Source: Leucoraja erinacea (lineage: Eukaryota). Taken from it: a stretch of DNA of 64,000 nt. Below the pieces are notes generated by a model that was not told the DNA's origin, made no database searches, and saw only the letters and a list, made by a program, of their open reading frames with translations. How positions within the stretch are numbered: position 1 is the first letter of the stretch; each line of letters begins with the position of its first letter. The DNA lies in the NCBI RefSeq assembly GCF_028641065.1, contig NC_073382.1, forward strand, positions 59,396,001 to 59,460,000, written 5' to 3'. Positions 8,938 through 58,653 of the stretch are shown here, piece after piece. The position numbers were made by a program, and so were the translations under genes.

Positions 8938-9600
8938 GCCCCTCCCCCACGGCATCGTCACTCAGACATAGACCCCGCCCTCACCACCATAGGCCCCTCC
9001 CCCACGGCATCGTCACTCAGACTTAGACCCCGCCCTCACCACCATAGGCCCCTCCCCCACGGCATCGTCACTCAGACTTAGACCCGCCCTCACCACCATA
9101 GGCCCCTCCCTACACGAATCGTCACTCAGACTTAGACCCCGCCCTCACCACCGTAGGCCCCTCCCCCACGCCATCGTCACTCAGACATAGACCCCGCCCT
9201 CACCACCATAGGCCCCTCCCCTACGGAATCGTCACTCACACAGACCCCGCCCTCACCACCATAGGCCCCTCCCCTACGGAATCGTCACTCAGACTTAGAC
9301 CCCGCCCTCACCACCATAGGCCCCTCCCCTACAGAATCGTCACTCAGACATAGACCCCGCCCTCACCACCATCGCCCTCCCCTACTGATGCGTCACTCCG
9401 ACATAGGCCCCGCCCTCATATACGTCACAGGCATCGGCAAAGATCCTATAGATCTTTGGGCATTGGCCTCGATCCCACTGATTCGTCACTCAGACATAGT
9501 CCCCGACCTCATCATACGTCAGTGAAGCATAGGCCCCTCCCCTACTTATGCGTCACTCCGACATAGGCCCCGCCCTCTTCACACGTCACTGATGCATTGT
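8938..9600. repeat. 55-bp tandem repeat (~8 near-perfect copies plus degenerate ones) with CGTCAC and CCCCGCCC motifs
   Basis: Unit GCCCCTCCCCCACGGCATCGTCACTCAGACWTAGACCCCGCCCTCACCACCATAG; starts at 8938, 8993, 9048. Confidence 0.95.
9438..9458. mobile_element. 21-bp TIR remnant (putative P-type excision footprint)
   Basis: GGCATCGG|CAAAGATCCTATAGATCTTTG|GGCATTGG; 8-bp TSD with 1 mismatch. Confidence 0.7.
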
Positions 9601-9606
9601 CCCGAT

Positions 9607-9623
9607 CTGCTATAGGATATTTG
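9607..9623. mobile_element. 17-bp one-sided TIR remnant (putative P-type excision footprint)
   Basis: GTCCCGAT|CTGCTATAGGATATTTG|GTCCCGAT; perfect 8-bp TSD. Matches the right arm of the 49643 insert at 15/17. Confidence 0.65.
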
Positions 9624-9708
9624 GTCCCGATCCTACTGGTTCGTCACTTGCTGAAGAAGGGTCTCGACCCGAAACCTCGCCTATTTCCTTCGCTCCATAG
9701 ATGCTGCC

Positions 9709-9734
9709 CAGATACTGCTCCACTAGTATCTTTG
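9709..9734. mobile_element. 26-bp TIR remnant (putative P-type excision footprint) inside a SINE-like fragment (~9650-9775)
   Basis: ATGCTGCC|CAGATACTG-CTCCACTAGTATCTTTG|ATGCCGCC. The 17-nt right arm matches the 49481 arm at 16/17. Confidence 0.7.
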
Positions 9735-11509
9735 ATGCCGCCTCACCCGCGGAGTTTCGCCAGCATTTTTGTCGACCGTCACTCAGACGTGGTCCTTGCC
9801 CCATCACACGTCACTCCAGCTTGGCCCCGCCCCGCCCCGCGGTCCCCTCAACCCCAGGCCCGAACCACATCCGCGATTGCTTTCCTTGCAACAGGTGCCG
9901 CTTGTCCCGCTGAGTGGCCCCAGCATTTTCCGTTTTTATTGTGTTTTAAACGTTCTCCTGGTCAAAACATCTCCGCGCACAGGCCCCACCCGGCTCACAG
10001 TCACAGCCGCCCTTGCCCCAGGCAGGTTCAACTCTCAGCAGCGACCGGCGTTTATAAACACTGTCTTCCTGCATTCTGGCCAGAATCGATCCTATTAGTG
10101 ATATATTATTTTAACCCCGCCCCGCTCACTCCCAGCAATTATCCTTGTGCTACGATGCGATTACATTGCTATATTTTACGTGATCCCTGACACAAGCGAC
10201 CACTAAGTGGCACTTTTCTGGCCTTTGGAAGGACAAGATCCTCGGGTATCGGGTGACAGTAAGTATCGGCGCAGGCGAAAGTAACGACGCGGGTGATGAA
10301 TCAGACCGAGAGGAAAGAGATATCACAGGGATTAAATGGAGAAAACTGTTTCCGTGTGGAATCACAGAGTTACCAGTTGCAGAAAGTAATTAGAAACACG
10401 ACTGACCGAATAACTGGGGAGAGGGAAGAACTGCAGAGTAGCCAAAGACATGGATTTTGAGAAGTAATTTCCTTTAAGCTTTTTACATCGCTGTTTCTTC
10501 CTGCATTGATCTGATAACTGGGATTTCTCGCCATCCATAGGAAATCTTGGTGTTACTATTTTACTATTAGTGAGACCGGTCCATTCTCATCTTCATTGTT
10601 TGGTCCTGAAATTTGGTTCAATTTCATCTGTGGGAGTTGAATTTATCGGCTATAGTTTTCTGTTCACTTACACTGTATTCCGATACTTGTACCTAATTTT
10701 GTAAACTTGGTCCAAATCGTCAACATAATATTTATTCCTAACTCTCTAACTCAGCCCTATTATACTCTCGTCTGGAGTTAACTTTGTTGTCAAAAAGTCA
10801 ATATGAATTTATAAAGTGTAGTAATTGTCAAAATAGAAAATTATTTGAAGAGGTAAACATAGCAATTGCCAGGGGCATGTCTGTGGATGGTATTTAAATA
10901 GATTTCAAAATGCCATTTCACAAAGTCTATAATATGAGATGCTAAGCTAAGGTTCACAGTTTTATTCTAAACACCAAAAGAAAATGCAGATTTGAAAAAA
11001 TAAATGTTTTGTACAACAGGCCACATCAAGCTCCCTCTCTATCTCCCATTATATTGCTGATCCCTCCCAAGTTTTCATGGATTCCTCCACTTGCCCATCT
11101 TCACCAGAATCAATCCCCACATCTAACCATCATTGTTTGCCTTATTGTGAAGAGATCCAATCCTGCTCTGTCACCTTTTTGTTGTTCCCCCGCCCTTGCT
11201 TCCCAACCATCATTGTACCTCAGATATTTCCACCCCATGTGCCCTCATGGTGAAGAAATAATATAGCATGATCAAACTTAAAGACATGAAAAGGAAGTTT
11301 ATTTTCATTCAACCTCTTCCAATTAGATAGACACTCTTGATTTTATTAGAACAAGGTTTAGTGGCCAAAATATGTTTCTTAATGTGTCCAATAACATTAA
11401 ACCCATGTTTATGAGGAAACATCTTGAGTTTTATTCTAATATCCAGTTAGCATTTATTGCTGTTTTAAATGTGTTTTATCAACTTCCATTAACTGTAGAT
11501 TCAGCTGCC

Positions 11510-29227: not shown

Positions 29228-30010
29228 CTATTTATAACGGACTAGACGTAAGACCTTATAATTCATGAAGTCAGAGGAATCTGGCTGTAGTGAATCTACA
29301 TGAAATCCATCACTCATTGCTGTTTTAAGCACTTCTTCTACAAACAACTGAAAATTGTTAACTTGCTCATTTGCAGGCACAGTCCAAAGTCTTTTTAAGT
29401 TTTGTTGTGTGTATTCATCTTCAGGCAATACTGCTACATGCCCAACCCACTGCAATGTCAAATGGTGTGGATCCTTCTTCTCATAACCAATTGGAAAAAG
29501 TCTACCATTAACAAAGTAACAAAACTTGGAGCTCAAATGCTTCAAAAAATCAGCTGATGTGCAAAATATGTTGGCATCAAAGACATCTGTGCTGCACGAG
29601 GTTAGGTTGTACATTTGTGGAGCTGGCTTTACAGTGAAGTACACAGTTTGCAGTCTCTGGTCCAGAGTAATGTTGAGCATTGCATTCCTTTCCGCCTTAG
29701 CATTTTCAGACTCTCTCTCCTGCAAGGCTGCGATTAAAGGCTGGATCTGGTAAAAATCCGCTTCTCTCTTCAACAGCCTAACTTCTTGAAAATCATCTGG
29801 GAGGTCGAGGTTTGATGTGCGCAAAAAATTTAGAATATATCGAAATATTTTCCCATCTCGATCTATGAAGTAATTTCCACGCTGATCACTGGTTGAAGGC
29901 ATTTTCCCACTAAACATTACTCCCAGCATTGAGTCTGGGTAACGTGTTAAAGTTGCCAGAGAACTGGTGTACAATTTCCCTCCTACATTTATTGTTATGG
30001 GATCAGACAT
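29228..30010 (-). CDS. KCTD21: BTB/POZ domain-containing protein KCTD21, single coding exon
   Basis: MSDPITINVGGKLYTSSLATLTRYPDSMLG...FIDRDGKIFRYILNFLRTS (T1-BTB). Acceptor CAG at 30045-30047. Divergent from USP35, as in mammals. Confidence 0.93.
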   Translation of the reverse strand: MSDPITINVGGKLYTSSLATLTRYPDSMLGVMFSGKMPSTSDQRGNYFIDRDGKIFRYILNFLRTSNLDLPDDFQEVRLLKREADFYQIQPLIAALQERESENAKAERNAMLNITLDQRLQTVYFTVKPAPQMYNLTSCSTDVFDANIFCTSADFLKHLSSKFCYFVNGRLFPIGYEKKDPHHLTLQWVGHVAVLPEDEYTQQNLKRLWTVPANEQVNNFQLFVEEVLKTAMSDGFHVDSLQPDSSDFMNYKVLRLVRYK

Positions 30011-36799: not shown

Positions 36800-38550
36800 T
36801 CGAAAGCTGTACGCTTAGCCCCTTGCTCTATTCTTTACATCCATGCTGTGCTGCTAAGCGCACGACTAATCTCAGTAGGTCAAGCAGCATTTCTAAAAAG
36901 GGAATCAACCCGTGCCTAAGAAATGACTGGGATAGACTTCAGTTTGCCTGTCATTACAACTGGTCACTGCAGATACTATCTCACTGGCTCCCCACTCTGC
37001 ACTGGGCTATCTAGAAAGCAAGAACACATATGTCAGTCTGCTGTTCATCGACTACAGCTCGGTATTCCTCTCCAAACTTATGTCATCTCCAAGACCTGCG
37101 GTAGGTACAAAATGCTGGAGTAACTCAGCGGGACAGGCAGCATCTGTAGCGAGAGAAGGATTGGGCGACGCTTCTTCACACTGATGTCGGGGAGGGGGCG
37201 GGACAAAGACCTCCAAGACCTTCCCTCCAAGACTTAAGCCTCTGCACCTCTGCTTGCCACTGAATCCTTGACTTCCTCATCAGCAGATCTTAATCAGTGC
37301 GGATTGGTAACAACACGTCCTCACTGATCATCAACACAGGTGCATATCAAACTGTATGCTTAGCCCCCTGCTCTAATCTTTATATCCATGCTGTGTGGCC
37401 AAGCGCATAGCCAATGCAGCTATAGATTTGACGATGCAGTACTGTTGTTGGACGAAGCATGGATGGTAATGAGTAAGCGTACAGAAGAGTGTAAGAATAC
37501 CTGGTTGAGTGGTGCCAACAATTTCACACTCAACGCCAACAAAACCCAGGGAGAAGAGTCAAGAGTGTTTAATTGTCATATGTACTGACACGGAACAATG
37601 ACATTATTTCTTACTACAGCTTACCAGAACCATTAATGCAATACCCACAGTTAAATATTTACTAGTCAATAATACAGTAAATTAAAGACCATTATACTAG
37701 GTAATGCTCACTGTGCAAAACCAAAGTCCACAGTGCAACCAAAGACACAGTTTATCGAAGGTCATAATTGCTGAGGTAGTGATTATAATTGGTGAGGTTG
37801 CTGCTGTGTAGTGTTCGAAACCCTGATGGTTTATCAGGAATAAGCTGTTCTTGAACCTGGTGGTCACGGTTTTCAGGCCCCTGTACCTTCTTGTCGATGG
37901 TAGTGGCATGGTCAGGGTGCTTTATATCATTGATGATATTGGCTGCCATTTTGAGGCATGCTCCTATGATCCCTTTGATATTGGGAGGTCAGTACCTGTG
38001 ATGGGGTCAAGGAAAGAGCGTTCACGTCGCGGCCCTGTTTTCACCAATCTTTCCACCACCATGTACAAGAAGCCCAAGACACACCATTGTTTGCAGATGC
38101 CAAGAAGTATTTTCAGCTCTGGCTGAACAACTTCTAATCTTGTGTGTGGGCTCGATAAGAAGAGGAAGTACCTGCCATGGACCGGGCAATGTCTGTAGCT
38201 TCCTTCGCTCTTGGACGTTCGAGCAGCCAAATCAGGCTGTGATGTAGCGAGCCAAAATGCACTCTGCCATACACCTGTAGAAGTTCAATAGAGTGTTTAA
38301 TCCTGAAACTTCTCAAATCTTTCAAGGAAGTAGAGGTGTTGACGATCTTTCTATCTGATTGCACCGATATAGTAGTCCTTGGACAGATTTTTAAGAGATA
38401 TGATGCACAGGAACGTGAAGCTGTTGACTCTCTCCACATTCCATTGATGAAGACAGGAAGCATCTATCGGAAGGATTGTCACCCTCCAGGCTCTGCCCAC
38501 TTCCGCTGCTGAAGTTGCACATCCAGGTTCAGGAACAGCTACCAGGTTCT
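36800..38550. mobile_element. Mosaic of degraded Rex1/Babar-like LINE and SINE fragments
   Basis: LSPLLYSL and LPSTRRYRGLKTVTTRFKNS-type ORF remnants on both strands. Confidence 0.6.
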
Positions 38551-45585: not shown

Positions 45586-45989
45586 CAACGGGTGGATGCT
45601 CCATTGGTATCCTCGATCACCAACTACCCGACTGGACTACCACAATATGTCACGCAACAGAACTGTGTCTCGGACATGGTGGTGAGCAACACACGAGCCC
45701 CACAGGGGACGGTCCTTTCTCCCTTCCTGTTTACACCTCAGACTTCAGACATAGCTCCACCTCCTGCCACCTGCAGAGGTTTTCAGATGGCTCTGCAATT
45801 GTGGGCTGCATCAGTGAGGGGAGGGAAGCTGAATACAGAGGTGTAGTCAACGAATTTGTTGAGTGGTGTGGGCTGAATCACTGCAGCTCAACACCGACAA
45901 TATCTAAAGAGTTGGTGGTGGAGTTTAGGAGGAGAGGAACACCCCTGTCCCTTGTCGCCATCATTGGTGTGGATGTGCAGTTTACCAGG

Positions 45990-47281
45990 GACTGGTTATG
46001 CAGCATATCAAAAATAGTCTACCTGCCGACCTAGACCCACTGCAGTTCGCCTACAGAGCCAACCGATCCACAGAGGACGCAGTCTCAACAACACTGAACC
46101 TCGTACTGTCACACTTTGATCGGAAAAATACCTATGCCAGGATCCTCTTCATAGACTTCAGCTCTGCTTTTAACACAATCATTCCACAGCAGCTGGTGGA
46201 GAAGTTGAAGCTATTGGCGGTTGATGCTGGCACATGTAACTGGGTCCTGAACTTTCTATCGCAACGGCAGCAGACAGTCAGGGTGGGCAGTAGGACATCA
46301 AAAACCATAGCCATGAGCACTGGCTCGCCCCAAGGCTGTGTCCTAAGCCCCCTGCTGTTTAGTCTGCTTACACACGACTGTACTGCTAGACTCAACATCA
46401 ACTTCATCAACAAGCTCGCTGAAGACACAACAGCGGTGGGTCTCATCAGTGACAATGAGTCGGCGTACAGGATGGAGGTGGAGCTGCTCACAGGATGGTG
46501 CAAATCCCATAACCACATTCTCAACGTGGGAAAAACTAAGGAGATGGTGGTTGACTTCAGGAGGGCAGGAAAACAACTCCATACACCTCTGCATATCGAT
46601 GGAGCTGATGTGGAAAGGGTCAGCAGCGTGACATTTCTAGGACTCCACCTGTCAGATGACCTGACGTCCATGACCAACACCACAGCACTGGCCAAGAGAG
46701 CCCAGCAGCGACTACACCCTCCCCGAAGACTACGGAAAGCAGGTCTCCCCAATACACACCTACGAACTTTTTTATAGGGGGACAGTCGAGAGCACATTAA
46801 CCTACGGCATCACTTTCTGGTTCGGGAGCTGCAAGGCGTACGAACGGCACCAACTAGACAGGATTGTGAAGACCGCCAGCAGGATTATTGGTGCTCCACT
46901 CCCTTTCCTGCTGGACATATACAGGAAGAGATGTATCAGCAGAGCCATCTCCATCATCAAAGACCCCTACCACCCATCGCATCACATATTCTCCATCCTG
47001 CCATCTGGGAAGAGGTACAGGAGCATTAGCTGCAAAACCAGCAGGATGCTCCTCAGCTTCTGAGGAGCCACTGTCGTGCCGCTGCCGATCGGAACGCCTG
47101 TTGATGTTTAGTAGAGAGTAGAGTGTTTAATTTGTTCATGATGATATATGTATTTTTATTTCTATTTATTTTTTACTGCACACTGAATGGACACTGGTTG
47201 AGCAACATTTTTTTGTTTTCTCTGGGTATGTGAGTACTCAGGAAAATGACAATAAAGATATACTTGATATTTGATACTTGA
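45990..47281 (+). mobile_element. 5'-truncated Rex1/Babar-like LINE (RT)
   Basis: ORF 45998-46777 ([28 protein letters not shown]); (GATACTT)-like tail. Confidence 0.85.
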
Positions 47282-48976
47282 AATACCTTGTAGTGTACGT
47301 GGACAGTAAATTGGACTGGTCCAGGAGCTGAGGCCCTGTACAAGAAGGGACAGAGCAGGCTGTACTTTTTGAGAAGGCTCCGCTCCTTCAATGTCTGCAG
47401 TGAGATGCTGCAGATGTTCTAGCCATTGGTGGTAGCCAGTGCCATCTTCTTCATTGTCATGTGCTGCAGCAGCAGGGCGAAGGCTGCGGACGCCAATAGG
47501 AATAACAAACTCATCAGGAACATTTGGCTCTGTCCTGGGGGAGGAGTTGGATTCTTGGGAGGTGCTCTTGGAGGGGAGGATGCTTCTCAAACTGTGGAGC
47601 ATCCTGGACAATACAGCTCACCCCCTCCATGACACACTGGTCAACCTGAGGAGTACCTTCAGCAACAGACTGGTTCCAACAAGATGCAGGACAGAACGCC
47701 GCAGGAGATCCTTCTTGCCTGTGGCTATCAAACTTTGCAACTCCTCACCCTTCTGTCGTTGGGTAGACCGAGACCGAGACTGACCCCCCCCCCCCCCCCC
47801 CACCTTTGCACATCCCCAAAGCCTTACCAGTCGTCACTTTATTTTCATTTCATGTATTTTGTGTTTTAGAAATTTTAGTACATTTTAGAATATTAGGAAA
47901 GCAGCAAAAGATCAGTCTATATTCTCCAAAAAATGCAAGATAAACTCAAATCAATCATATTGCTAGAATCAATTTAACATTTGTTTTGCTTATTTTAAAA
48001 TATCTAAAGTGGCATCATAAAACACAATCTTCATTCTCACAGTTCTCTTCATTTTTAGTAATGAATCATTTGTAAAGTTCCACAAATTATAAATGGGTAG
48101 CACAGCATCTAAAAAAGGAGATAAAACAGCACTGTTGGCAATACTTAACCGGTAAAACATGGTCTAGAGGAGTTGAGATAACTATTACCATAAGACAAAA
48201 AATTTGCACACATCTTTCGTGGCAACTATTATCACATTTAAGGCATTCATACAGGTTTTCAAAAAGGAGACTGATTAATAAGCATTTGTTATTTCACACA
48301 GCTTATTTTACAGTAACTTCAAAAGGTTTATCAAATTCATCGAACAGACACTCCATGAAATAACCGGCAGAAACAAGGAACTGCAGATGTTGGTTTACAA
48401 AAAAAGACACAGAGTGCTGGAGTAACTCAGCGGGCCAGGCAGCATCTCTGGAGAGGATGGAGTACGTCACCTATCCACGATGTCCAGAGATGCTGCCTGA
48501 CCCAGTGAGTAACCCCAGCACTCTGTCTCCTTTCAGTGAAATAGCATGTGAATACCAGGCATAAATTCATATTTCCAAAGTTTTCATTCTGCTGGTCAAA
48601 GCCATTTCTGCATCACAACAGCTAAACATTGGGTAAATAAATAAATGTTAAAACTTAACTTTAACGTAGCACATACTTTCTAAATGACCAAACAGTTATG
48701 ACCCCTTGGTGCGCTGTGAACCTGTTTTCGTATCCGCTACTTTCGACCCGAAAGCATAATTTGCGCTGACAGCGGATTTGTTATGTAAAAGAAAACCTTT
48801 CCGAATAAAACGCAGTAGATGCAGAAAATTACGGCATCACAGAAAAATGCATTTTTTAATGCAACCATATCATGAGTCACTGCTCCCCACAACTACACAA
48901 TCGCCGTACACTGGGGAGATGAGGCGCACCTGCAATCCACACAAACACTGCATTGTGCAGAGTGCACGGCACTCAC

Positions 48977-49150
48977 CTTGCTTCAACCCAACTTGGTGAC
49001 GAGCCCGTGGTGGAAGCTGGTAGCGCTTCGGCGTACGGACTTTGTAGTTTAACACCAGTTCTTTACACCATTTTCCCCATTGTGATCCCAAAATTGAACT
49101 ACAACTCCCAGAATACAAAGCAACACACATGCGCATTGCCATGCGGATGG
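48977..49150 (-). promoter_or_regulatory. Probable KCTD21 non-coding exon 1 and promoter
   Basis: Minus-strand donor AAG|GTGAGT at 48977/48976. ZNF143-type ACTACAACTCCCAGAATAC at 49098-49116. NRF1-like CATGCGCA at ~49128. Local CpG enrichment. Confidence 0.6.
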
Positions 49151-49480
49151 CTGCAACCAACATTTTAAAGCTAGCGCAGTTCTTTCGTTTTCTGTGCAGG
49201 GTGAATTAAAAGTTCAGACGCTTGGGTTGTTGCGTGCCATGAAACAATGCACAAGCCCACCCCCAGAAAAGAAGCACACGAGTAAATTCTTGCAGTTGCT
49301 GGAAATCTGAAACAAAATAGAAAATGTTAGAGTACTCAGCAGAGTAGACAATATCAATTAAGACAAAAACGGAGTTAGGGTTTCAGGTCGACAAAAATGC
49401 TGGAGAAACTCAGCGGGTGATGCAGCATCTATGGAGAGAAGGTAATAGGCGACGTTACGGGCCGAAATCCTTCTTCAGAC

Positions 49481-49514
49481 CAAAGATACTAGAGGAGCTC
49501 CTCTAGTATCTTTG
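49481..49514. mobile_element. 34-bp perfect palindrome (17+17), putative P-type excision footprint
   Basis: CTTCAGAC|CAAAGATACTAGAGGAG-CTCCTCTAGTATCTTTG|CTTCAGAC. Absent from the related copy at 55.7 kb. Confidence 0.85.
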
Positions 49515-49642
49515 CTTCAGACTGATGTGAGGGTAGGGGCGGGAAGAAGAAGGAAAGAGGTGGAGCCAGTGGGCTGAGGGAGAGTTGAGAAGGGGAGGAG
49601 AAAGTAAGGTCTATCTGAAATTGGAGAAGTCAATGTTCATAC

Positions 49643-49669
49643 CAAAGATCTTCTGCTATAAGATCTTTG
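49643..49669. mobile_element. 27-bp TIR remnant (10+17), putative P-type excision footprint
   Basis: GTTCATAC|CAAAGATCTT-CTGCTATAAGATCTTTG|GTTCATAC. Absent from the related copy at 55.6 kb. Confidence 0.85.
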
Positions 49670-49915
49670 GTTCATACTGCTGGGGTGCAAACTGCCCAAG
49701 CGAAATAGGAGCTGCTGCTCCTCCAATTTACGGTGGTCCACACTCTGGCCATGGAGGAGGCCGAGGACAGAAAGGTCGGATTCAGAATGGGAGGGGGAAT
49801 TGAAGTGCTGAGCCACCGGGAGATCAGGTTGGTTATTGCGAACCGAGCTGAGGTGTTCGGCGAAGCGATCGCCAAGCCTATGCTTGGTCTCACAAATGTA
49901 GAGCAGCTGACATCT

Positions 49916-50821
49916 CAAGTCAAGTCAAGTCAAGTTTATTTGTCACGTACACATACGAGATGTGCAGTGAAATGAAAGTGGCAATGCTCGCGGACTTTTG
50001 TGCAAAAGACAAACAACCAAACAAACCATAAACACAATCATAACACATATATTCTTTTACATAATAAATAATGGAAGGAAAAACGTTAAGTAGAGTTAGT
50101 CCCTGGTGAGATAGGCATTTACAGTCCGAATGGCCTCTGGGAAGAAACTCCTTCTCAACCTCCCCGTTCTCACTGTATGGCAACGGAGGCGTTTGCCTGA
50201 CCATAGCAGCTGGAACAGTCCGTTGCAGAGGTGGAAGGGGTCTCTCATGATATTGTTGGCTCTGGAGTTGCACCTCCTGATGTATAGTTCCTGCAGGGGG
50301 GCAAGTGAAGTTCCCATAGTGCGTTCGGCCGAACGCACTACTCTCTGCAGAGCCTTCTTGTCCTTGGCAGAGCAATTCCCAAACCAGATGGTAATGTTCC
50401 CGGACAAGATGCTTTCCACCGCCGCTGCGTAGAAGCACTGGAGGATCCTCAGAGACACTCTGAATATCCTCAATTGCCTGAGGTGGTAATGGCGCTGCCT
50501 TGCCTTACTCACTAGTGCTGAGGCGTGTGATGCCCATGTCATATCCTCGGAGATGTGGACTCCCAGATATTTAAAACAGTTCACCCTATCCACAGGATCC
50601 CCATTTATCCTCAATGGAGTGTACGTCCTCGGATGATGTGCCCTCCTAAAGTCCACGATCAGCTCCTTCGTTTTTTTGATGTTCAAGAGGAGGCTGTTAT
50701 CCTGGCACCAGAGTGCTAGACCAGCCACCTCCTCCCGGTAGGCCTTCTCTTCGTTGTCTGAGATCAGGCCCACCACCATTCATTTCATTTCACTGCACAT
50801 CAGCAAACTTAATTATTGAGT
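49916..50821 (-). mobile_element. 5'-truncated Rex1/Babar-like LINE
   Basis: ORF 50096-50779 (KTKELIVDFRR, FKYLGVHI); (CTTGA)n tail; TSD CATCT. Confidence 0.85.
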
Positions 50822-52719
50822 CATCTAGAGCAGCGGATGCAATAGATGAAGTTGGAGGAGGTGCAGGGGAACCTCTGCCGCACCTGAAAAGACTGCTTGG
50901 TCCTTGAATGGAATCAAGGGGGGAGGTAAAGGGCCCGGTGTTGCATATCTTGCGGTTGCAACAGAAAGTGCCCGGGGAGGGGAAGGGAAGGGAAGAATTG
51001 ACAAGAGATCTTTGGTTGGCAGAGGTTCATGCAGCTCTGCCCATCTCATGCTCCGTCAGCGTTAAAAGCAAACAAAAAAGATCATGTTGGAAAGCTGAAA
51101 TCAAGACACGAAATGCGCAGTGACCAGGTTTCAGGTCAATGGAAGAATTATGAACCATGATTTATGATTGTTTTAATTTTATAAAATGATCAAAAAGAAT
51201 TTGCAATCATAATTTAAGGCCTCATCATATGGTTTTAATATTGACATTCACTGATAAGTTCAGATGTATATCCTGCAATTTCAGTTGAAAAAAATATTTT
51301 TCTTTCATAACCAGATTTTATTGCCATTCAAATGATCTCAAATTTATTTCTATGCGATTTGATTGCAAATTGTTGATATTGAATGAGTTCTGCATGGATG
51401 TGTTGTACATGCATGTAAAGCCACACCTAAATAAGCTCACAATAGTTGGAAATAAGATGATTTTTTTAAATGATCTATTTTATTTAATAAATTACACTTG
51501 GTAGTTAAAATACTGATTTTTCAAAATAAAGTATGTACTAAAATAGAAAAATGCATGCTGTGAACAAAAAAAGAACAATCCTGCATCTTTTCCAAAAATC
51601 TATGAGCATTTCCAGCCTAATTTGCTCACTCTCGACTCACAAATGTCCTTGTGCTGTCAAACAATTTGTCTGACATCTATTTCCAGATGAGTCAAAATAT
51701 TCTCCAGTTATGCATCAGGAAACCCAGCACTGTTGTCTTCAGCATATATTATCTGATACTTTGCCTGTGATTTAATTGCTGCTCCTTAGCACAGCCACTA
51801 CAGAATCCATTCATGGCTGATGTCTTAAACTAAACAAGATTGCATGTAATTTGTGCACTATATTTAACTCTGATGCGGCCTTAGTCTACAACCTTGTACC
51901 TTCTCCATATAAAAACATGACCTTCCGTATGGTGGTCTGGTCAATATAATAGCCTATTTTGGTTAACCTGGAAATCTAAGGTTCAAATGGGCTTCAAACT
52001 GGTGTTATAGGTTAGATACTTCTGTGGATTTGGTCAATTTAAAACCGTCTTTCATATTTTAAATGGTATCAAGTCCAACATTCATCACCTTAATCACTAG
52101 TATTAATTAATTAATTAGTAAACCATTCATTAGGTTTATACTGTACTGATGGGACAGTGTAAATCTTAATTCAGAAAGACACACATCAATAAAAGATGGT
52201 CAGCATATATTTACAAAGGGTAGGTTGTATCTAAGTTAATCAAATTCATAGCGGAACTAACATAGATGATCAGCCAAGGCAGTGATGTTGATGTAATTTA
52301 CATGGATTTCAACAAGGCTTTTGACATGGCCCCACACAGTGGTCAGGTCAAAATAAAAGCCAAGAATGGGGAAATTGGATCCAACATTGACTTGTAGAAA
52401 GTTAATGTAATGGTCAACAAGTGTTTTTGTAACTGGAAGACACTTACCAGTTGAGTTCCATATCATTCATTTGAGGGCATGATAATGAAATTTGAAGATT
52501 ACAGTAAGGAGAAAAAAACTGAAGGATGATATGGAGAGCTTGAAGAGTGGCAAATGGAATACGATACAGGGATGCGAACAATAATATGTGATTGTGTGTG
52601 AGTGTGTGTGACTTGGAGTGAAGCCTTTGGGTCATTGGCATTTCAATACACTTGAGGAATACACTTGGTACAATTTTGATACACTTGGTATCCCTGGATT
52701 TCCAGTTATAGGCACATTA

Positions 52720-53690: not shown

Positions 53691-55224
53691 ATATGTTTCG
53701 TAGAAGATACAGAGTGCTGCAGCAGGTCAGATAGCATTTAGGTGAACAATTTTGGGTCGGGACACTTTTTCAGTCTGATTGTAGAGGGGAGAAAGAAACC
53801 TGGAAGAGAGGAGTGGTTGGACAAAGCCTGGAAAGTACTGTTGTGGTTTAATTAGTCATGGAGTGTAAGCTTTGGCATTTGGTGAATAAAATACACTGGA
53901 GCTGGTGGTAGAGTGAAAAAATCTTTAGGGTTCTAAAAGGACAACATAAACAGAAATGTGGCTATATGTGCATTATTGAAAGTGGCAAAATTGATTGAGA
54001 AGGTGGTTGAAAATATATGTAATGTTAGACTTTATAAATAAAGGCACAGAGTACATGAGCAACCAAGTCGCACTAAAATGTTGGAGTATTGTATCCAGTT
54101 TTGGACACCAAAAACATTTATGAATAGCTTTAGAGAGGATGCAAAACAGATTTTCTAAAATGATTCCTAGGAAAAGGAACTTTAGATGTGTGGGTAGAAT
54201 AGACAATCTGGGTTTTTTTACTCTTGGGACAGAGGAGCTTGCAAATTTGAGAGTAGATAGAGAGAAACTGCTCTCATTGACAGAAAAGTCTGGGGGATAT
54301 AGGATGAAGGTAATTTGTTAAAGAACCAAAAATTGACTGAGAAAAAGTCTTATCTGCAGCAAATAGTTTGGGTTCTGTATTGCAATGTCATGGGGAGTAG
54401 TAGAGGCTGATTCAGTCATTTGCACAAATTCAGGAGCTGCACAAATGTATGAAAGTAAGGAATCTGATTGCTGAGGAAGGCAGGGATAGCTAAGTTATTG
54501 CAATGAAGAAAACAAAATGCTTGGAACAGTCAGTAGGTCAAGCAATATCTGTGAAGCGAAATATGGTAAATGCTTCAGACAAAGGCCCTTTGTCACACCT
54601 GGGGAAAAGAGAAAATAGGTTTGTTTTAAGGAGCAAAGAGCATGGATAGGATAGGATAGGCCCAGACCAGAGTTTCTGTGGGATATACTATTGATGAAGC
54701 CATCTAATTGATAGTTCGTGAGGAGAGTTAGTGAAAAAAATATATATACTAAGCAGTCAAATCTTGGTCAAGGATGCAAGAAATGCTGACCACAGCAGAT
54801 ACTATTGGTAGAGAGAGAGAGCGAAAGCCGCGTTGATATTACGGATGGATAGCAGAGCAGAGAAAGCGAGTTGCTATAAATTGCTGGAATCAAGAATTAA
54901 AGAGCACATTTAGGCAATGGGCCTTGTTAAAGCAGTAAGGGAAGCCAGACCGAAAAGTGAGAACGAGTGTGGAATTGCGAATTAAAGTGACAATAACAGC
55001 AAACTCCTTTCTGTGCGGATGGAACTTAAGTGCCGTGGGAGGACACGTTGCGACCTTCTGTTTCTCTATATACAGATACTTCTGGAACTGTTTCGCTCTC
55101 CAGCTGCGCATTTCGTGTCTTGATTTCAGCTTTCCAACATGATCTTTTTTGTTTGCTTTTAACGCTGACGGAGCATGAGATGGGTAGAGCTGCATGAACC
55201 TCTGACAACCAAAGATCTCTTGTT

Positions 55225-55865
55225 AATTCTTCCCTTCCCTTCCCCTCCCCGGGCACTTTCCGTTGCAACCGCAAGATATGCAACACCTGTCCCATTACCT
55301 CCCCCCTCGAATCCATTCAAGGACCCAAGCAGTCGTTCCAGGTGCGACAGTGGTTCACCTGTATCTCCTCCAACCTCATCTACTGCATCCGCTGCTCTAG
55401 ATGTCAGCTGATCTACATCGGTGAGACTAAGCGGAGGTTGAGCGATCGTTTCGCCGAACACCTCCGCTCGGTCTGCAAGAACCTACCTGACCTCCCGGTG
55501 GCTCAGCACTTCAACTCCCCGTCCCACTCCCCATCCGACCTCTCTGTCCTGGGTCTCCTCCATGGCCAGAGTGAGCAACACCGGAAATTGGAGGAACAGC
55601 ACCTCATATTCCGCTTGGGGAGTCTGCATCCTGCGGGCATGAACATTGAATTCTCCCTTGCTGTCTCCTCCCCTTCCTCAGCCCTCGGGCTGTCTCCTCC
55701 CATCCCTCAGCCTCCGGGCTCCTCCTCCTCCTTTTTTCCTTCCTTCTCCCCGCCACCCCCTATCAGTCTGAAGAAGGGTTTTGGCTCGAAACGTTGCCCA
55801 TTTCCTTTGCTCCATAGATGCTGCTGCACTCGCTGAGTTTCTCCAGCATTTTTGTGTACCTTTGA
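55225..55865 (+). mobile_element. Penelope-like GIY-YIG 3' fragment
   Basis: ORF 55342-55836: NLIYCIRCSRCQLIYIGETKRRLSDRFAEHL. Confidence 0.85.
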
Positions 55866-55884
55866 CTGACAACTACTGGACCAG

Positions 55885-56282
55885 TGGAGCGCGGACACAG
55901 GGGCGGGGGCTCTTGGAGCGCGGGCACGGGGGGGCGGGGTTGCAGGGGCGCGGGCCACGGGGGAGGGGGGCGGGCTTGCAGGGGGCGCGGCCACATGAGA
56001 GGGGGCGGGGCTACGGGGGCGCCATGGGGCACAGGAGCGCGGGCACGGGGGGGCTACGCAGGGGCGCGGCCACAGGCCATGGGGCGAAGAGGGGGGGCGC
56101 GGCCACAGGAGAGGGGGCGGGGTTATAGGGGGCGCGGCCATGGGGGGGGGGGGCTACAGGGGCGCGGGCACATGGGGGGGCGGGGTTGCAGGGGGCGCGG
56201 CCACATGAGAGGGGGCGGGGCTATAGGGGGCGCGGCCATGGGGGCGGGGTTACGGGATGCGCAGCCACGAGGGGGCGGGGCA
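55885..56282. repeat. G-rich degenerate tandem array of GGGGCGGGG / GGCGCGGCCAC units
   Basis: Directly visible ~35-40 bp degenerate repeats. Confidence 0.85.
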
Positions 56283-56560
56283 CGCATCGATTGGTTGCTA
56301 AGACATTCATGGGCGGGGCATGTTCACCAACCCTGTCCTGATTGGCTGGAGCGGGAGCGCGCACGGCGCGGGTTGAACGCAAGGGAACGTTCTGATTTAA
56401 AGCCGCACGCGCGGGGCAACGGCAGCTTTGGACGGTGCGGTTTCAGTGGTGACGGTCACGGACTTGTGGTCGGGTTTCAGGCCGTGGGAGGAACTCGCTG
56501 ACGTTAATGTCTTCCCCTCCTCTGCGACCGCTGGACACCCGTGTGAAGGTGGGTAGGTAG
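56270..56560 (+). promoter_or_regulatory. USP35 CpG-island promoter and probable non-coding exon 1
   Basis: ATTGG (CCAAT) boxes at ~56290 and ~56341, GC boxes, candidate donor AAG|GTGGGT at 56548/56549, acceptor ending at 57278. Confidence 0.65.
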
Positions 56561-57289
56561 GTGGCTTGTGGAGGTGGCCGGAGGGACGGGTGGTCAAAGC
56601 CCACCCGCTGCCCACCGGGGCTCGGCGAGGAGTTGGGGACCGCTGCCTGCCCGGCTGCCTGCCTCTGTTGCTATAGCTGCTATTATCTGCTACTATAGTT
56701 AGTTATCAGCAGTGACTGCTCCCTGGCGCTGCGAAAGCGGCGTTCAATCAAGTGCACAGACATCGCCGGGATTGTCACATGTAACGGACATAATTCTTAC
56801 TTGCTGTAGTTTGACATTGATACTGCAGCATAATAGTATATATTTATCTGCTGTCCTGCCCGTAGAACCAACAGCCATAGAGCCATAGTGATACAGTATG
56901 GAAACGGGCTCTTAGCCCAACTTGCCCACAACGGCCAGCAATGTTCCAGCTGCACTAGTCCCACTGGCCTGCGCTTGGTCCATATCCCTGCGAACCTGTC
57001 CTATCCACGTACCTGTCTGTCTCTTAAATGTTGGCGAAGGAGCCATTTATGTCTAGGCTAGCTACTGTTGGCATATTATATTGTCTGATTCCTATTAAAT
57101 CTTTTTCTCTTCACCTTGGACCAGTTCTTTGGTCCTCTATTCCCCTGCTCTGGGCAAGAGACTCTGTGCATCGATCCGATCTATGCCTCACATGATTTTG
57201 TAATCCTATGGGTGGGATTTTCTTCTAGATTTTATATTGTGAAATTCTAATTCTAATTAATATTGACTTGTTTTTAAGATTGAAAAAAC

Positions 57290-57971
57290 ATGGATAAGAT
57301 TTTAGAAAACATGGACAAGATGTTGTCCCACCATCCAACTTCTATGAAGCATGTAAAACGAATTAAAGAAGCAGCAAAAGAACCTCTCGACCATAAGCAG
57401 TGTATGGCCATGTTTGAGTTGTCTACAAAATTCATTCTGTCGGGTGACACACAGTTCCAAAAGGATGTCGGCAAGGAGGTTCTAGAAGCTTTTGCCCAGA
57501 ACCACACTGCAGATTTTGAGATATTTTTCAATGTAAAATTTATCTTGAAACTGTTGCAAGATGGTTATGGAACACTGAGCAAAAGGAGCAGTGATATTTT
57601 GGAGTACATTCATCTAGGGTTAAAATATATTCAAGGTAATACTTCTGTCGATGAAGCATTTCATGCCCTTCAGATTGAGCTTCTCCGCATAGTGTGTGAG
57701 AAACCTGGATCAAAGCTCTGTGCCTGTGTTTGTAAACTACTTGCTGAATATCCTCAGTGCATTCCTAATGGAAAGTTTCAAGTGGTGTTTTGCCAGCAAC
57801 TTGTTAGATGTATAGGCCAGTTCCAATGCACATCACAAGACGAAGATGAAATTGTGAAATTCCTGGATCAAGTAAACAAAGTAAGCGGATTGTTCCAGCA
57901 AATCTGGTGGACACAAACTACAGCTATAATTCCCACGTTGCGGGAGCTGTTCACTGTTATTTCATCAACTG
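57290..57971 (+). CDS. USP35: Ubiquitin carboxyl-terminal hydrolase 35, first coding exon; the gene continues beyond the window
   Basis: MDKILE...FCQQLVRCIGQFQC...VSGL..IW...LRELFTVISST; donor G|GTAAGG at 57971/57972. Synteny with KCTD21 favours USP35 over USP38. Confidence 0.88.
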
Positions 57972-58653
57972 GTAAGGAAAATGCACATTTTAATTTAAAA
58001 GAAATGATTATTGACTTTGTTTTCCCCTTCATCTCCCCACTCCAGATGCTATAGCCTTCATTGCTTGCAGGCCAATCTGCTTGGCATTGTGGCCTATACT
58101 TCTGCATGCTAAACTTGGAAACATTGAGCTCGGAATAAAAAAATCAGCCACCTTTTATTTCTGTTCCTTCCTCTGGAGAATGTTTTTCTCATCTCAGCAT
58201 CACTACTGATTTGGCTGGGATTGGGTACTGGATGAATCCACAGTTCTCAGTTGTACAATGTACAAACTTAATGTTGAGGCTCTTGCCTCCACAGCAGAGC
58301 AGCACTGTTGAAAGGGATGACAATAGTCATGACAGCTCGTAGCTTAATGCCAGTTTTTAGTGTTATTTACAATGGCAAATAATGTATGCTGCCAAGAGAG
58401 CACCCATGAGATGCATGCGTAAGAGCAACTCGCCACAAATTAGTACCATTTTAAACAAAAAGTAATAATTTCCAACATGGTTGAGTCTACAAAGCAGAAA
58501 TAGCTGTATTTGTTATTGAATGTAAGCTCGTGTCAGATGAACAATTGATTATTCTGGTTTATGGGATATTCAGGGTTTTTTTTAGGATGGTAAACCCTAC
58601 ACTAAAACTAAAAACATTGTATGTAGCAAGAGGTTCTTGTCTTTCTTGACCTA

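What the first reader, a model, noticed from the sequence alone, without database searches (positions are those of the whole stretch)
49473..49677. Micro-inserts with the 17-nt P-element excision signature, suggesting a P/THAP9-type transposon was active in this lineage
Seen: two inserts ~130 bp apart, each between perfect 8-bp direct repeats and absent from the related Penelope copy at 55.6-55.8 kb. One is a perfect 34-bp palindrome (17+17, CAAAGATACTAGAGGAG). The other is 27 bp (10+17, arm CAAAGATCTTATAGCAG). Established: Drosophila P transposase makes 8-bp TSDs and cuts with a 17-nt stagger, leaving up to 17 nt of each TIR at the donor site, so end-joining gives footprints of at most ~34 bp. 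hAT excision via flank hairpins does not leave TIR arms. Inference: these are germline excision scars of at least two related CAAAGAT-ended P-superfamily subfamilies, implying the 17-nt cleavage chemistry is shared with this vertebrate lineage.
Basis: partly seen in the sequence, partly recalled or inferred. Interest (0 to 1): 0.9.

Follow-up and report, generated by a model that had tools for sequence, protein, structure and literature searches.

The report
P-element-type excision scars in a skate
These tiny inserts look like the scars left when a cut-and-paste transposon jumped out, and their 17-letter arms match the unusual cutting pattern so far shown only for the fruit-fly P element.

Summary
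Both inserts are as described: 49481-49514 is 17+17 and 49643-49669 is 10+17, each between perfect 8-bp repeats. Both are absent from the related copy at 55.6-55.8 kb.

Three more of the same family lie at 9438-9458, 9607-9623 and 9709-9734. A sixth sits in a metagenome contig, L037.

Of 12 arms, 6 are exactly 17 nt and 2 are 0. The other 4 are shorter than 17 and none is longer. Two inserts are a single 17-nt arm between intact 8-bp duplications, which a self-mobile mini-element cannot explain.

The layout matches published Drosophila P-element end-joined donor sites (PMC2895639, tables read).

My best reading, at 0.7, is germline excision footprints of a P-superfamily family with a 17-nt staggered cut.

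Not shown:
- No parent element or THAP transposase was linked to these ends.
- No orthologous empty site was obtained, because contigs break in the repeat.

The 34-bp palindrome is multi-copy.

First-stage readers flagged the same phenomenon many times elsewhere in this genome; those notes are unchecked.

The parts
49473..49480 (.). Left copy of the 8-bp target duplication CTTCAGAC of insert 1
   Evidence: single in the paralogous copy
49481..49497 (+). Insert 1, left arm, 17 nt, CAAAGATACTAGAGGAG (subfamily 1)
49498..49514 (-). Insert 1, right arm, 17 nt, exact reverse complement of the left arm; blunt 17+17 join
49515..49522 (.). Right copy of the duplication CTTCAGAC
49635..49642 (.). Left copy of the 8-bp duplication GTTCATAC of insert 2
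49643..49652 (+). Insert 2, left arm trimmed to 10 nt, CAAAGATCTT (subfamily 2)
49653..49669 (-). Insert 2, right arm, full 17 nt, CAAAGATCTTATAGCAG read on the minus strand
49670..49677 (.). Right copy of the duplication GTTCATAC
9430..9466 (.). Insert 3: GGCATCGG, 21 bp CAAAGATCCTATAGATCTTTG (13-14 + 7-8 nt, 1-nt overlap possible), GGCATTGG
9599..9631 (.). Insert 5: GTCCCGAT, one arm only (0+17; CAAATATCCTATAGCAG on the minus strand), GTCCCGAT
9701..9742 (.). Insert 4: ATGCTGCC, 26 bp (irregular 9-nt left stub CAGATACTG plus a full 17-nt arm, CAAAGATACTAGTGGAG on the minus strand), ATGCCGCC. It interrupts the conserved ~90-nt retroelement tail module.
   Evidence: a 34-column gap (26+8) in two other copies of the module (A3)

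Best explanation
These are donor-site scars left when copies of a cut-and-paste DNA transposon family with CAAAGAT... ends were excised from the germline.

Proposed mechanism, by analogy with the Drosophila P element:
1. An element inserts and duplicates 8 bp of target.
2. On excision, the transposase cuts each 3' end exactly at the element boundary and cuts the other strand 17 nt inside the element.
3. Each chromosomal end therefore keeps its copy of the 8-bp duplication plus a 17-nt single-stranded 3' tail made of the element's terminal 17 nt.
4. Host end joining fuses the two tails. They may be untrimmed (17+17, the 34-bp palindrome). One may be trimmed part-way (10+17, about 9+17, about 14+7). 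Or one may be trimmed back to the double-strand junction (0+17).

At least two subfamilies, identical at 13 of 17 arm positions, were active.

What is shown: the layout, the 17-nt cap, the retained duplications, absence from paralogous copies, and tight clustering.

What is inferred: that excision produced them, that the cut is staggered by 17 nt, and that the enzyme is a P/THAP9-type transposase.
For: 1. All six inserts have 8-bp duplications on both sides: 3 perfect and 2 with one mismatch in the window, 1 perfect in L037.

2. Arm lengths are 17/17, 10/17, 13-14/7-8, about 9/17, 0/17 and 0/17. So 6 of 12 arms are exactly 17, 2 are exactly 0, and none exceeds 17. The two peaks fall at the two nick positions that a 17-nt stagger predicts.

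3. The lone 17-nt arms occur twice independently, in different subfamilies and different sources (9607-9623 and L037). In L037, 1 of 40 metagenome loci carrying the 17-mer has the duplication. In the prokaryotic and viral scans, 0 of 34 loci do.

4. The layout is the same as experimentally sequenced Drosophila P{wa} junctions. Those keep both 8-bp copies and at most 17 nt per arm, and include a blunt 17+17 join and strongly one-sided trims (PMC2895639, Tables 1-3 read).

5. A review states the 17-nt stagger, the 8-bp duplication, the preference for promoters and origins, and local hopping of P elements (PMC7776569, passages).

6. The inserts are absent from paralogous copies (A1; A3).

7. The five window inserts form two tight clusters. 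A clustering this tight arose in 7 of 2,000,000 random placements. Three of the five lie in a CpG island at 8.5-10 kb.

8. The ends are CA...TG with a 3'-terminal G, as in the P element and zebrafish Pdre2.

9. Geometry (my inference): a 17-nt stagger on a 34-bp unit would release two unpaired 17-mers, so the 34-bp unit could not itself move by that chemistry.
Against: - No element with these ends, full-length or MITE-sized, is present in the 64 kb.
- No THAP-like motif was found in any frame (the regular expression was recalled, so it is a weak test).
- The sample is small: 6 inserts, 12 arms.
- The 17+17 palindrome alone does not fix 17, because its centre GAGCTC is self-complementary. Longer tails could in principle anneal there. 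The 17-nt figure therefore rests mainly on the two 0+17 cases, and also on the 10+17 case.
- The palindrome centre has summed contig depth 18,812 in run X1 against about 27-32 for the flanking single-copy contigs. Hundreds of copies exist. That also fits a self-mobile unit, or copies that spread inside the retroelement.
- Orthologous empty or filled sites were not obtained. Contigs of all four runs end at 49409 and resume near 51100.
- The two inserts of this finding are not in a CpG island.
- Unchecked first-reader notes elsewhere in the genome mention units of up to 38-40 bp. Those would need filler nucleotides to fit this reading.
Confidence: 0.7

Rival explanations
1. The units are self-mobile micro-transposons. 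A transposase recognises only the terminal 17 bp, and the 34-bp palindrome (and its variants) inserts as a unit, making an 8-bp duplication each time.
For: - The palindrome centre is covered at several hundred times single-copy depth in all four runs.
- The identical 17-nt arm recurs at three window sites and in L037.
- The duplications of the two inserts of this finding are perfect.
- No longer parent lies in the window.
- Some first-reader notes elsewhere read the units this way (unchecked).
Against: - All six inserts have different lengths: 34, 27, 26, 21, 17 and 17 bp.
- Two are a single arm with both duplications intact, which cannot insert as a two-ended element. No repeat is present that would delete exactly one arm afterwards.
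- All truncations are at the inner ends of arms, as expected for trimmed overhangs.
- The shared 17-nt cap would be an unexplained coincidence.
Confidence: 0.1
2. They are excision footprints, but of a transposon that is not in the P superfamily. This would be a hAT-like or still uncharacterised 8-bp-duplicating superfamily whose transposase also cuts far inside its ends.
For: - The 8-bp duplication is shared with hAT elements (stated for Tol2 in PMC3553969) and, from recall, with several other superfamilies.
- CAAAG fits the hAT terminal motif YARNG (recalled, not tested).
- No transposase was linked to these arms here.
Against: - hAT, MULE and Transib form hairpins on the flanking DNA and release clean element ends (PMC5499845).
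- Tol2 footprints are described as precise excision or various indels (PMC3553969; the figures were not visible).
- The 17-nt stagger is described as atypical and distinctive of P (PMC7776569; PMC10983969).
- An earlier follow-up of this scan reports a P-type transposon copy in this genome (not checked here, and its ends are unknown to me).
Confidence: 0.15
3. They are not transposon-related. They would be chance palindromes or replication-slippage products within repetitive DNA.
For: All lie in or near repetitive retroelement sequence.
Against: - 0 of 200 resampled windows had even one such structure.
- The same two 17-nt arms recur at different targets.
- The same arm with a fresh 8-bp duplication occurs in an unrelated contig.
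Confidence: 0.02

Closest known systems
End-joined donor sites of the Drosophila melanogaster P element (P{wa} junctions; 17-nt non-complementary 3' overhangs)
   Same: Both copies of the 8-bp duplication are kept. Each arm holds at most 17 nt of the element's end, read inward from CA.... A blunt 17+17 join is seen, and so are strongly one-sided trims. The spectrum of lengths is heterogeneous (PMC2895639 Tables 1-3; PMC7776569).
   Different: The arm sequence is unrelated (CAAAGAT... against CATGATG...). The scars here are fixed germline features of a cartilaginous-fish-like genome, with five in 64 kb. Few fillers or long microhomology joins appear among the six. The parent element and enzyme were not identified here.
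Zebrafish Pdre2 elements and zfTHAP9 transposase
   Same: A vertebrate P-type system with 8-bp duplications and ends that start with CA (PMC10983969).
   Different: Pdre2 has 13-bp inverted repeats of unrelated sequence. In the parts I read (section 6 and passages), the cleavage stagger of the vertebrate enzyme is not reported and no genomic footprints are described.
hAT elements and their footprints (Tol2, Hermes)
   Same: An 8-bp target duplication. The terminal CAAAG fits the recalled YARNG motif.
   Different: hAT excision hairpins the flanking DNA, so element ends are not left behind (PMC5499845). Tol2 leaves precise sites or indels (PMC3553969).
Miniature inverted-repeat elements (MITEs)
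   Same: Short and non-coding, with inverted ends and flanking duplications.
   Different: They are 17-34 bp long, every copy has a different length, and two copies have one arm only.

Membership tests
P-superfamily excision footprint | Both copies of an 8-bp target duplication retained around the scar | tested here: met
   6 of 6 inserts: 4 perfect and 2 with one mismatch.
P-superfamily excision footprint | At most 17 nt of each element end retained, reflecting a 17-nt staggered cut | tested here: met
   Of 12 arms, 6 are exactly 17, 2 are 0 and 4 are shorter; none is longer. The sample is small. The cap is fixed mainly by the two 0+17 cases and the 10+17 case.
P-superfamily excision footprint | The arms are inverted copies of one terminal sequence, CA... 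at the 5' end and ...G at the 3' end | tested here: met
   compared with P and Pdre2 ends.
P-superfamily excision footprint | Parent elements with these ends encode a THAP plus RNase-H/GTP-binding P-type transposase | not testable with these tools
No eukaryotic genome collection was available to search. Earlier notes of P-type elements in this genome were not checked.
P-superfamily excision footprint | The site is empty or filled in relatives (direct proof of insertion followed by excision) | tested here: inconclusive
   Paralogous copies lack the inserts (A1; A3). At the orthologous locus, contigs of four runs stop at 49409 and resume near 51100, so none bridges the inserts.
P-superfamily excision footprint | Clustering and a preference for promoters or open chromatin | tested here: inconclusive
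   Clustering is strong: a pattern this tight arose in 7 of 2,000,000 random placements. Three of five inserts lie in a CpG island, but the two of this finding do not.
hAT element footprint | Flank-hairpin excision, giving scars made of flank-derived bases without element arms | tested here: not met
   The scars consist of element-end arms. The mechanism is taken from PMC5499845.
hAT element footprint | 8-bp duplication | tested here: met
Self-mobile MITE | Two inverted ends in every copy and a near-uniform unit length | tested here: not met
   2 of 6 copies have a single arm. The six lengths are 17, 17, 21, 26, 27 and 34 bp.

The most novel reading that the evidence does not exclude
The 17-nt staggered cut is a conserved property of P-superfamily transposases well beyond Drosophila.

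A CAAAGAT-ended family underwent very many germline excisions in skates, concentrated in hot spots such as CpG islands and the tails of Penelope-like retroelements. That left a countable fossil record of excision events.

The same family, with an identical 17-nt arm and a fresh 8-bp duplication, also left a scar in contig L037. That contig has a CpG ratio of 1.23, so it is probably not from a vertebrate. This would point to horizontal transfer between distant animals.
Probability: 0.3. Interest if true: 0.8.

Novelty: new member of a known kind. Interest (0 to 1): 0.6.

Why it matters
In the literature I read, the 17-nt stagger is presented as an atypical feature established for the Drosophila enzyme. 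The zebrafish THAP9 preprint, in the parts I read, does not report where the vertebrate enzyme cuts.

Natural scars capped at 17 nt in a vertebrate-type genome would be comparative evidence that this odd geometry is ancestral to the superfamily.

They would also provide:
- a way to count excisions, not just insertions, in a genome;
- a way to see how germline end joining handled long non-complementary 3' tails;
- a map of insertion hot spots.

My searches of the held library found no description of such scars in cartilaginous fish or other vertebrates. The library lacks most subscription journals.

Tried and rejected
1. I looked for a parent element in the window. For every CAAAGAT or ATCTTTG occurrence and every weak arm match, I searched up to 6 kb for the 8-bp flank repeated. 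Only the micro-inserts qualified. The pair at 55210/55865 (CTGACAAC repeated 656 bp apart) belongs to the retroelement copy itself, because its flank is conserved in the other copy at 51014. I rejected it.

2. Weak arm matches at 2400, 13565, 23098, 34994, 36275 and 37961 have no convincing duplications. The 34-bp candidate at 37944-37977 lies inside a retroelement reading frame and has only one arm-like half. I treated it as chance.

3. A THAP motif scan of all six frames found nothing.

4. Read laying on 48000-52000 with one run from each of four coded organisms aimed at orthologous empty sites. The repeat breaks all contigs, so there was no answer. The 41-nt skip at 49637/49679 seen in two runs probably comes from paralogous copies, and I did not use it.

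5. The metagenome, prokaryote-genome and viral scans for the two 17-mers gave 74 loci. 73 are chance matches without duplications and 1 (L037) is real.

6. Rfam found no hammerhead or other family in the conserved retroelement tail (at gathering thresholds; at E up to 10). I dropped my recalled idea that it is a Penelope hammerhead.

7. Alignment A2 of the tandem-like units around 9.3-9.66 kb was too poor to serve as an empty-site control for inserts 3 and 5.

8. I did not test the claim in another note that all five inserts lie at promoters, beyond the CpG-island check.

Full report
**Observation**

The two inserts are exactly as described.
- Insert 1: CTTCAGAC, then the 34-bp perfect palindrome at 49481-49514 (CAAAGATACTAGAGGAG followed by its reverse complement), then CTTCAGAC.
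- Insert 2, 128 bp further on: GTTCATAC, then 27 bp at 49643-49669 (CAAAGATCTT followed by CTGCTATAAGATCTTTG), then GTTCATAC.

A copy of the same retroelement on the other strand at 55585-55866 is about 85% identical in its BLAST segments. It has each target once and no insert.

I scanned for perfect 8-bp repeats enclosing 14-60 bp with at least 7 bp of inverted ends. The scan found these two in the window and none in any of 200 first-order Markov resamples.

The 'Penelope' label rests on a sub-threshold GIY-YIG match (E=3e-4, 21.4 bits against a cut-off of 22.6). Rfam gave no hammerhead in the conserved tail.

**More members in the window**

Pairing all CAAAGAT and ATCTTTG sites, and searching the two arms with mismatches, turned up three further inserts near 9.4-9.75 kb.
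- 9438-9458: 21 bp, CAAAGATCCTATAGATCTTTG, between GGCATCGG and GGCATTGG.
- 9709-9734: 26 bp, an irregular 9-nt stub plus a full 17-nt arm one mismatch from that of insert 1, between ATGCTGCC and ATGCCGCC.
- 9607-9623: a single 17-nt arm two mismatches from that of insert 2, between two perfect copies of GTCCCGAT.

The 26-bp insert interrupts a conserved ~90-nt retroelement tail. Two other copies of that tail show a gap of exactly 34 columns (26+8) at that point.

**A member outside the window**

39 are bare chance matches.

In L037 (Ga0056116_1106434, 1,630 bp) the 17-mer sits between two copies of GCCGCTGG. That is again a lone 17-nt arm.

None of the 34 loci from the prokaryote-genome and viral scans of the two arms has a flanking repeat, so they serve as a negative control.

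L037 shares nothing else with the window. Its CpG observed/expected ratio is 1.23 at 43% G+C, above every 1,630-bp tile of the window (median 0.42, maximum 0.92). It is therefore probably not from a CpG-depleted vertebrate genome. Its source is unknown to me.

**The arm lengths**

Over the six inserts the arms are:
- 17/17
- 10/17
- 13-14/7-8
- about 9/17
- 0/17
- 0/17

Six of 12 arms are exactly 17, two are 0, and none is longer.

The 34-bp palindrome alone would not fix the number. Its centre GAGCTC is self-complementary, so longer tails could anneal there. The two lone arms are bounded by the duplication on both sides, and in the 10+17 insert the left arm's similarity stops at base 10. These cases give 17 independently, in two subfamilies that are identical at 13 of 17 arm positions.

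Truncations are always at the inner ends of the arms. The outer CAAAG ends and both duplications are kept.

**Comparison with what is established**

A review of P transposition states that the 3' cut is at the element end and the 5' cut is 17 bp inside the inverted repeat. It also states that insertion makes 8-bp duplications, that insertions favour promoters and replication origins, and that elements hop locally (PMC7776569, passages).

Tables 1-3 of Chan et al. 2010 list sequenced P{wa} end-joined junctions (PMC2895639, read). Both 8-bp copies are kept, with 0-17 nt of each end. The tables include a blunt 17+17 join, one-sided trims, short microhomologies and fillers. The skate-type inserts have the same layout.

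By contrast, hAT, Transib and MULE enzymes hairpin the flanking DNA (PMC5499845, passages). Tol2 leaves precise sites or indels (PMC3553969, passages; figures not visible).

The zebrafish THAP9 preprint gives Pdre2's 13-bp ends and 8-bp duplication. In the parts I read it does not report the vertebrate enzyme's cut positions (PMC10983969).

**Mechanism**

I therefore read the inserts as end-joined donor sites after excision by an enzyme with a 17-nt stagger. Each flank keeps its duplication and a 17-nt 3' tail. Joining occurs with the tails untrimmed, partly trimmed, or trimmed to the double-strand junction. That explains peaks at both 17 and 0.

One inference is my own. Such a stagger applied to a 34-bp unit would release two unpaired 17-mers, so the palindrome could not move by the chemistry that defines it.

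**Context**

The five window inserts form two clusters: three within 305 bp and two within 190 bp. Clustering this tight occurred in 7 of 2,000,000 random placements.

The first cluster lies in a CpG island at 8.5-10 kb. The two inserts of this finding do not lie in one; the nearest islands are at 44.75-45.5 kb and 55.75-56.75 kb. The second of those islands precedes a USP38-like first coding exon at 57284-58051.

Three of the five inserts are within 30 bp of, or inside, the conserved retroelement tail module. I cannot explain that.

**What the reads showed**

I laid contigs of one run from each of four coded organisms on 48000-52000. The organisms differ from the window at about 0.7-1.5% of unique flanking positions.

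All four share the unique flanks and the start of the retroelement, but every contig ends at 49409 and contigs resume near 51100. The state of the orthologous sites is therefore unknown.

At 49498, the palindrome's centre, summed depth is 18,812 in X1 against 27-32 for the single-copy flanks. A variant lacking 2 nt at the centre is present in 3-4 contigs of every run.

The palindrome is thus present in hundreds of copies, with junction variants. Whether those copies are independent scars, copies inside an amplified retroelement lineage, or mobile units cannot be told from this output.

**Limits**

As a result, neither the link to a P-type transposase nor the genome-wide arm histogram was tested.

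**Earlier notes of this scan**

All earlier notes are unchecked first-stage notes, apart from one follow-up.
- They report the same kind of insert in many other windows of this genome.
- They report several THAP-bearing elements with 8-bp duplications.
- A follow-up calls the genome little skate and reports a dead P-type transposon copy.
- Two notes read the units as micro-transposons and mention sizes up to 38-40 bp.

I found the three inserts at 9.4-9.75 kb before seeing the note that lists them.

**Verdict**

The excision-scar reading with a 17-nt cap is well supported on a small sample. The P-superfamily assignment is probable but inferred.

It is a new member of a known kind of feature, P-type donor-site footprints, in a lineage where I found no published description.

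Noticed in passing
L037 1-1630 (contig Ga0056116_1106434): A eukaryote-like contig from a metagenome, with microsatellites and a CpG observed/expected ratio of 1.23. At 200-216 it carries a lone 17-nt arm identical to that of insert 1, between GCCGCTGG repeats. This may be the same transposon family in a non-vertebrate host. The contig also holds a ~445-bp element at about 841-1285 with inverted ends of about 30 bp.
   Followed up: partly
window 49916-50821: A ~907-bp block is present in the retroelement copy at 49385-51120 but not in the copy at 55104-55861. Its ORF at 50099-50779(-) hits the Pfam family ALKBH8_N, which also follows the reverse-transcriptase domain in the ORF at 45929-46774. 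It has ~20-bp inverted stretches near both ends and a 24-bp perfect palindrome at 50317-50340. Joints that skip 911-917 nt in all four runs show that copies without it exist elsewhere.
   Followed up: partly
window 9651-9777, 49385-49480, 55766-55861 and six more sites: A conserved ~90-nt retroelement tail module (CTGAAGAAGGG...CCAGCATTTTTGT) recurs at 9 places in the window. It has summed contig depth in the millions. Three of the five micro-inserts lie inside it or within 30 bp of it. Rfam finds no family there.
   Followed up: partly
window 29231-30010 (-): An intact single-exon KCTD11/21-like ORF, with BTB_2 and KCTD11_21_C domains (E=1e-69).
   Followed up: no
window 55750-56750 and 57284-58051 (+): A CpG island built of GGGGCGGGG-type repeats lies upstream of an exon encoding a USP38-like N-terminal domain (E=1e-68).
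   Followed up: no
window 48000-52000: Runs labelled as four different organisms all hold this locus. They show about 0.7-1.5% differences in the unique flanks, and all share the retroelement insertion edge at about 49385-49409.
   Followed up: no
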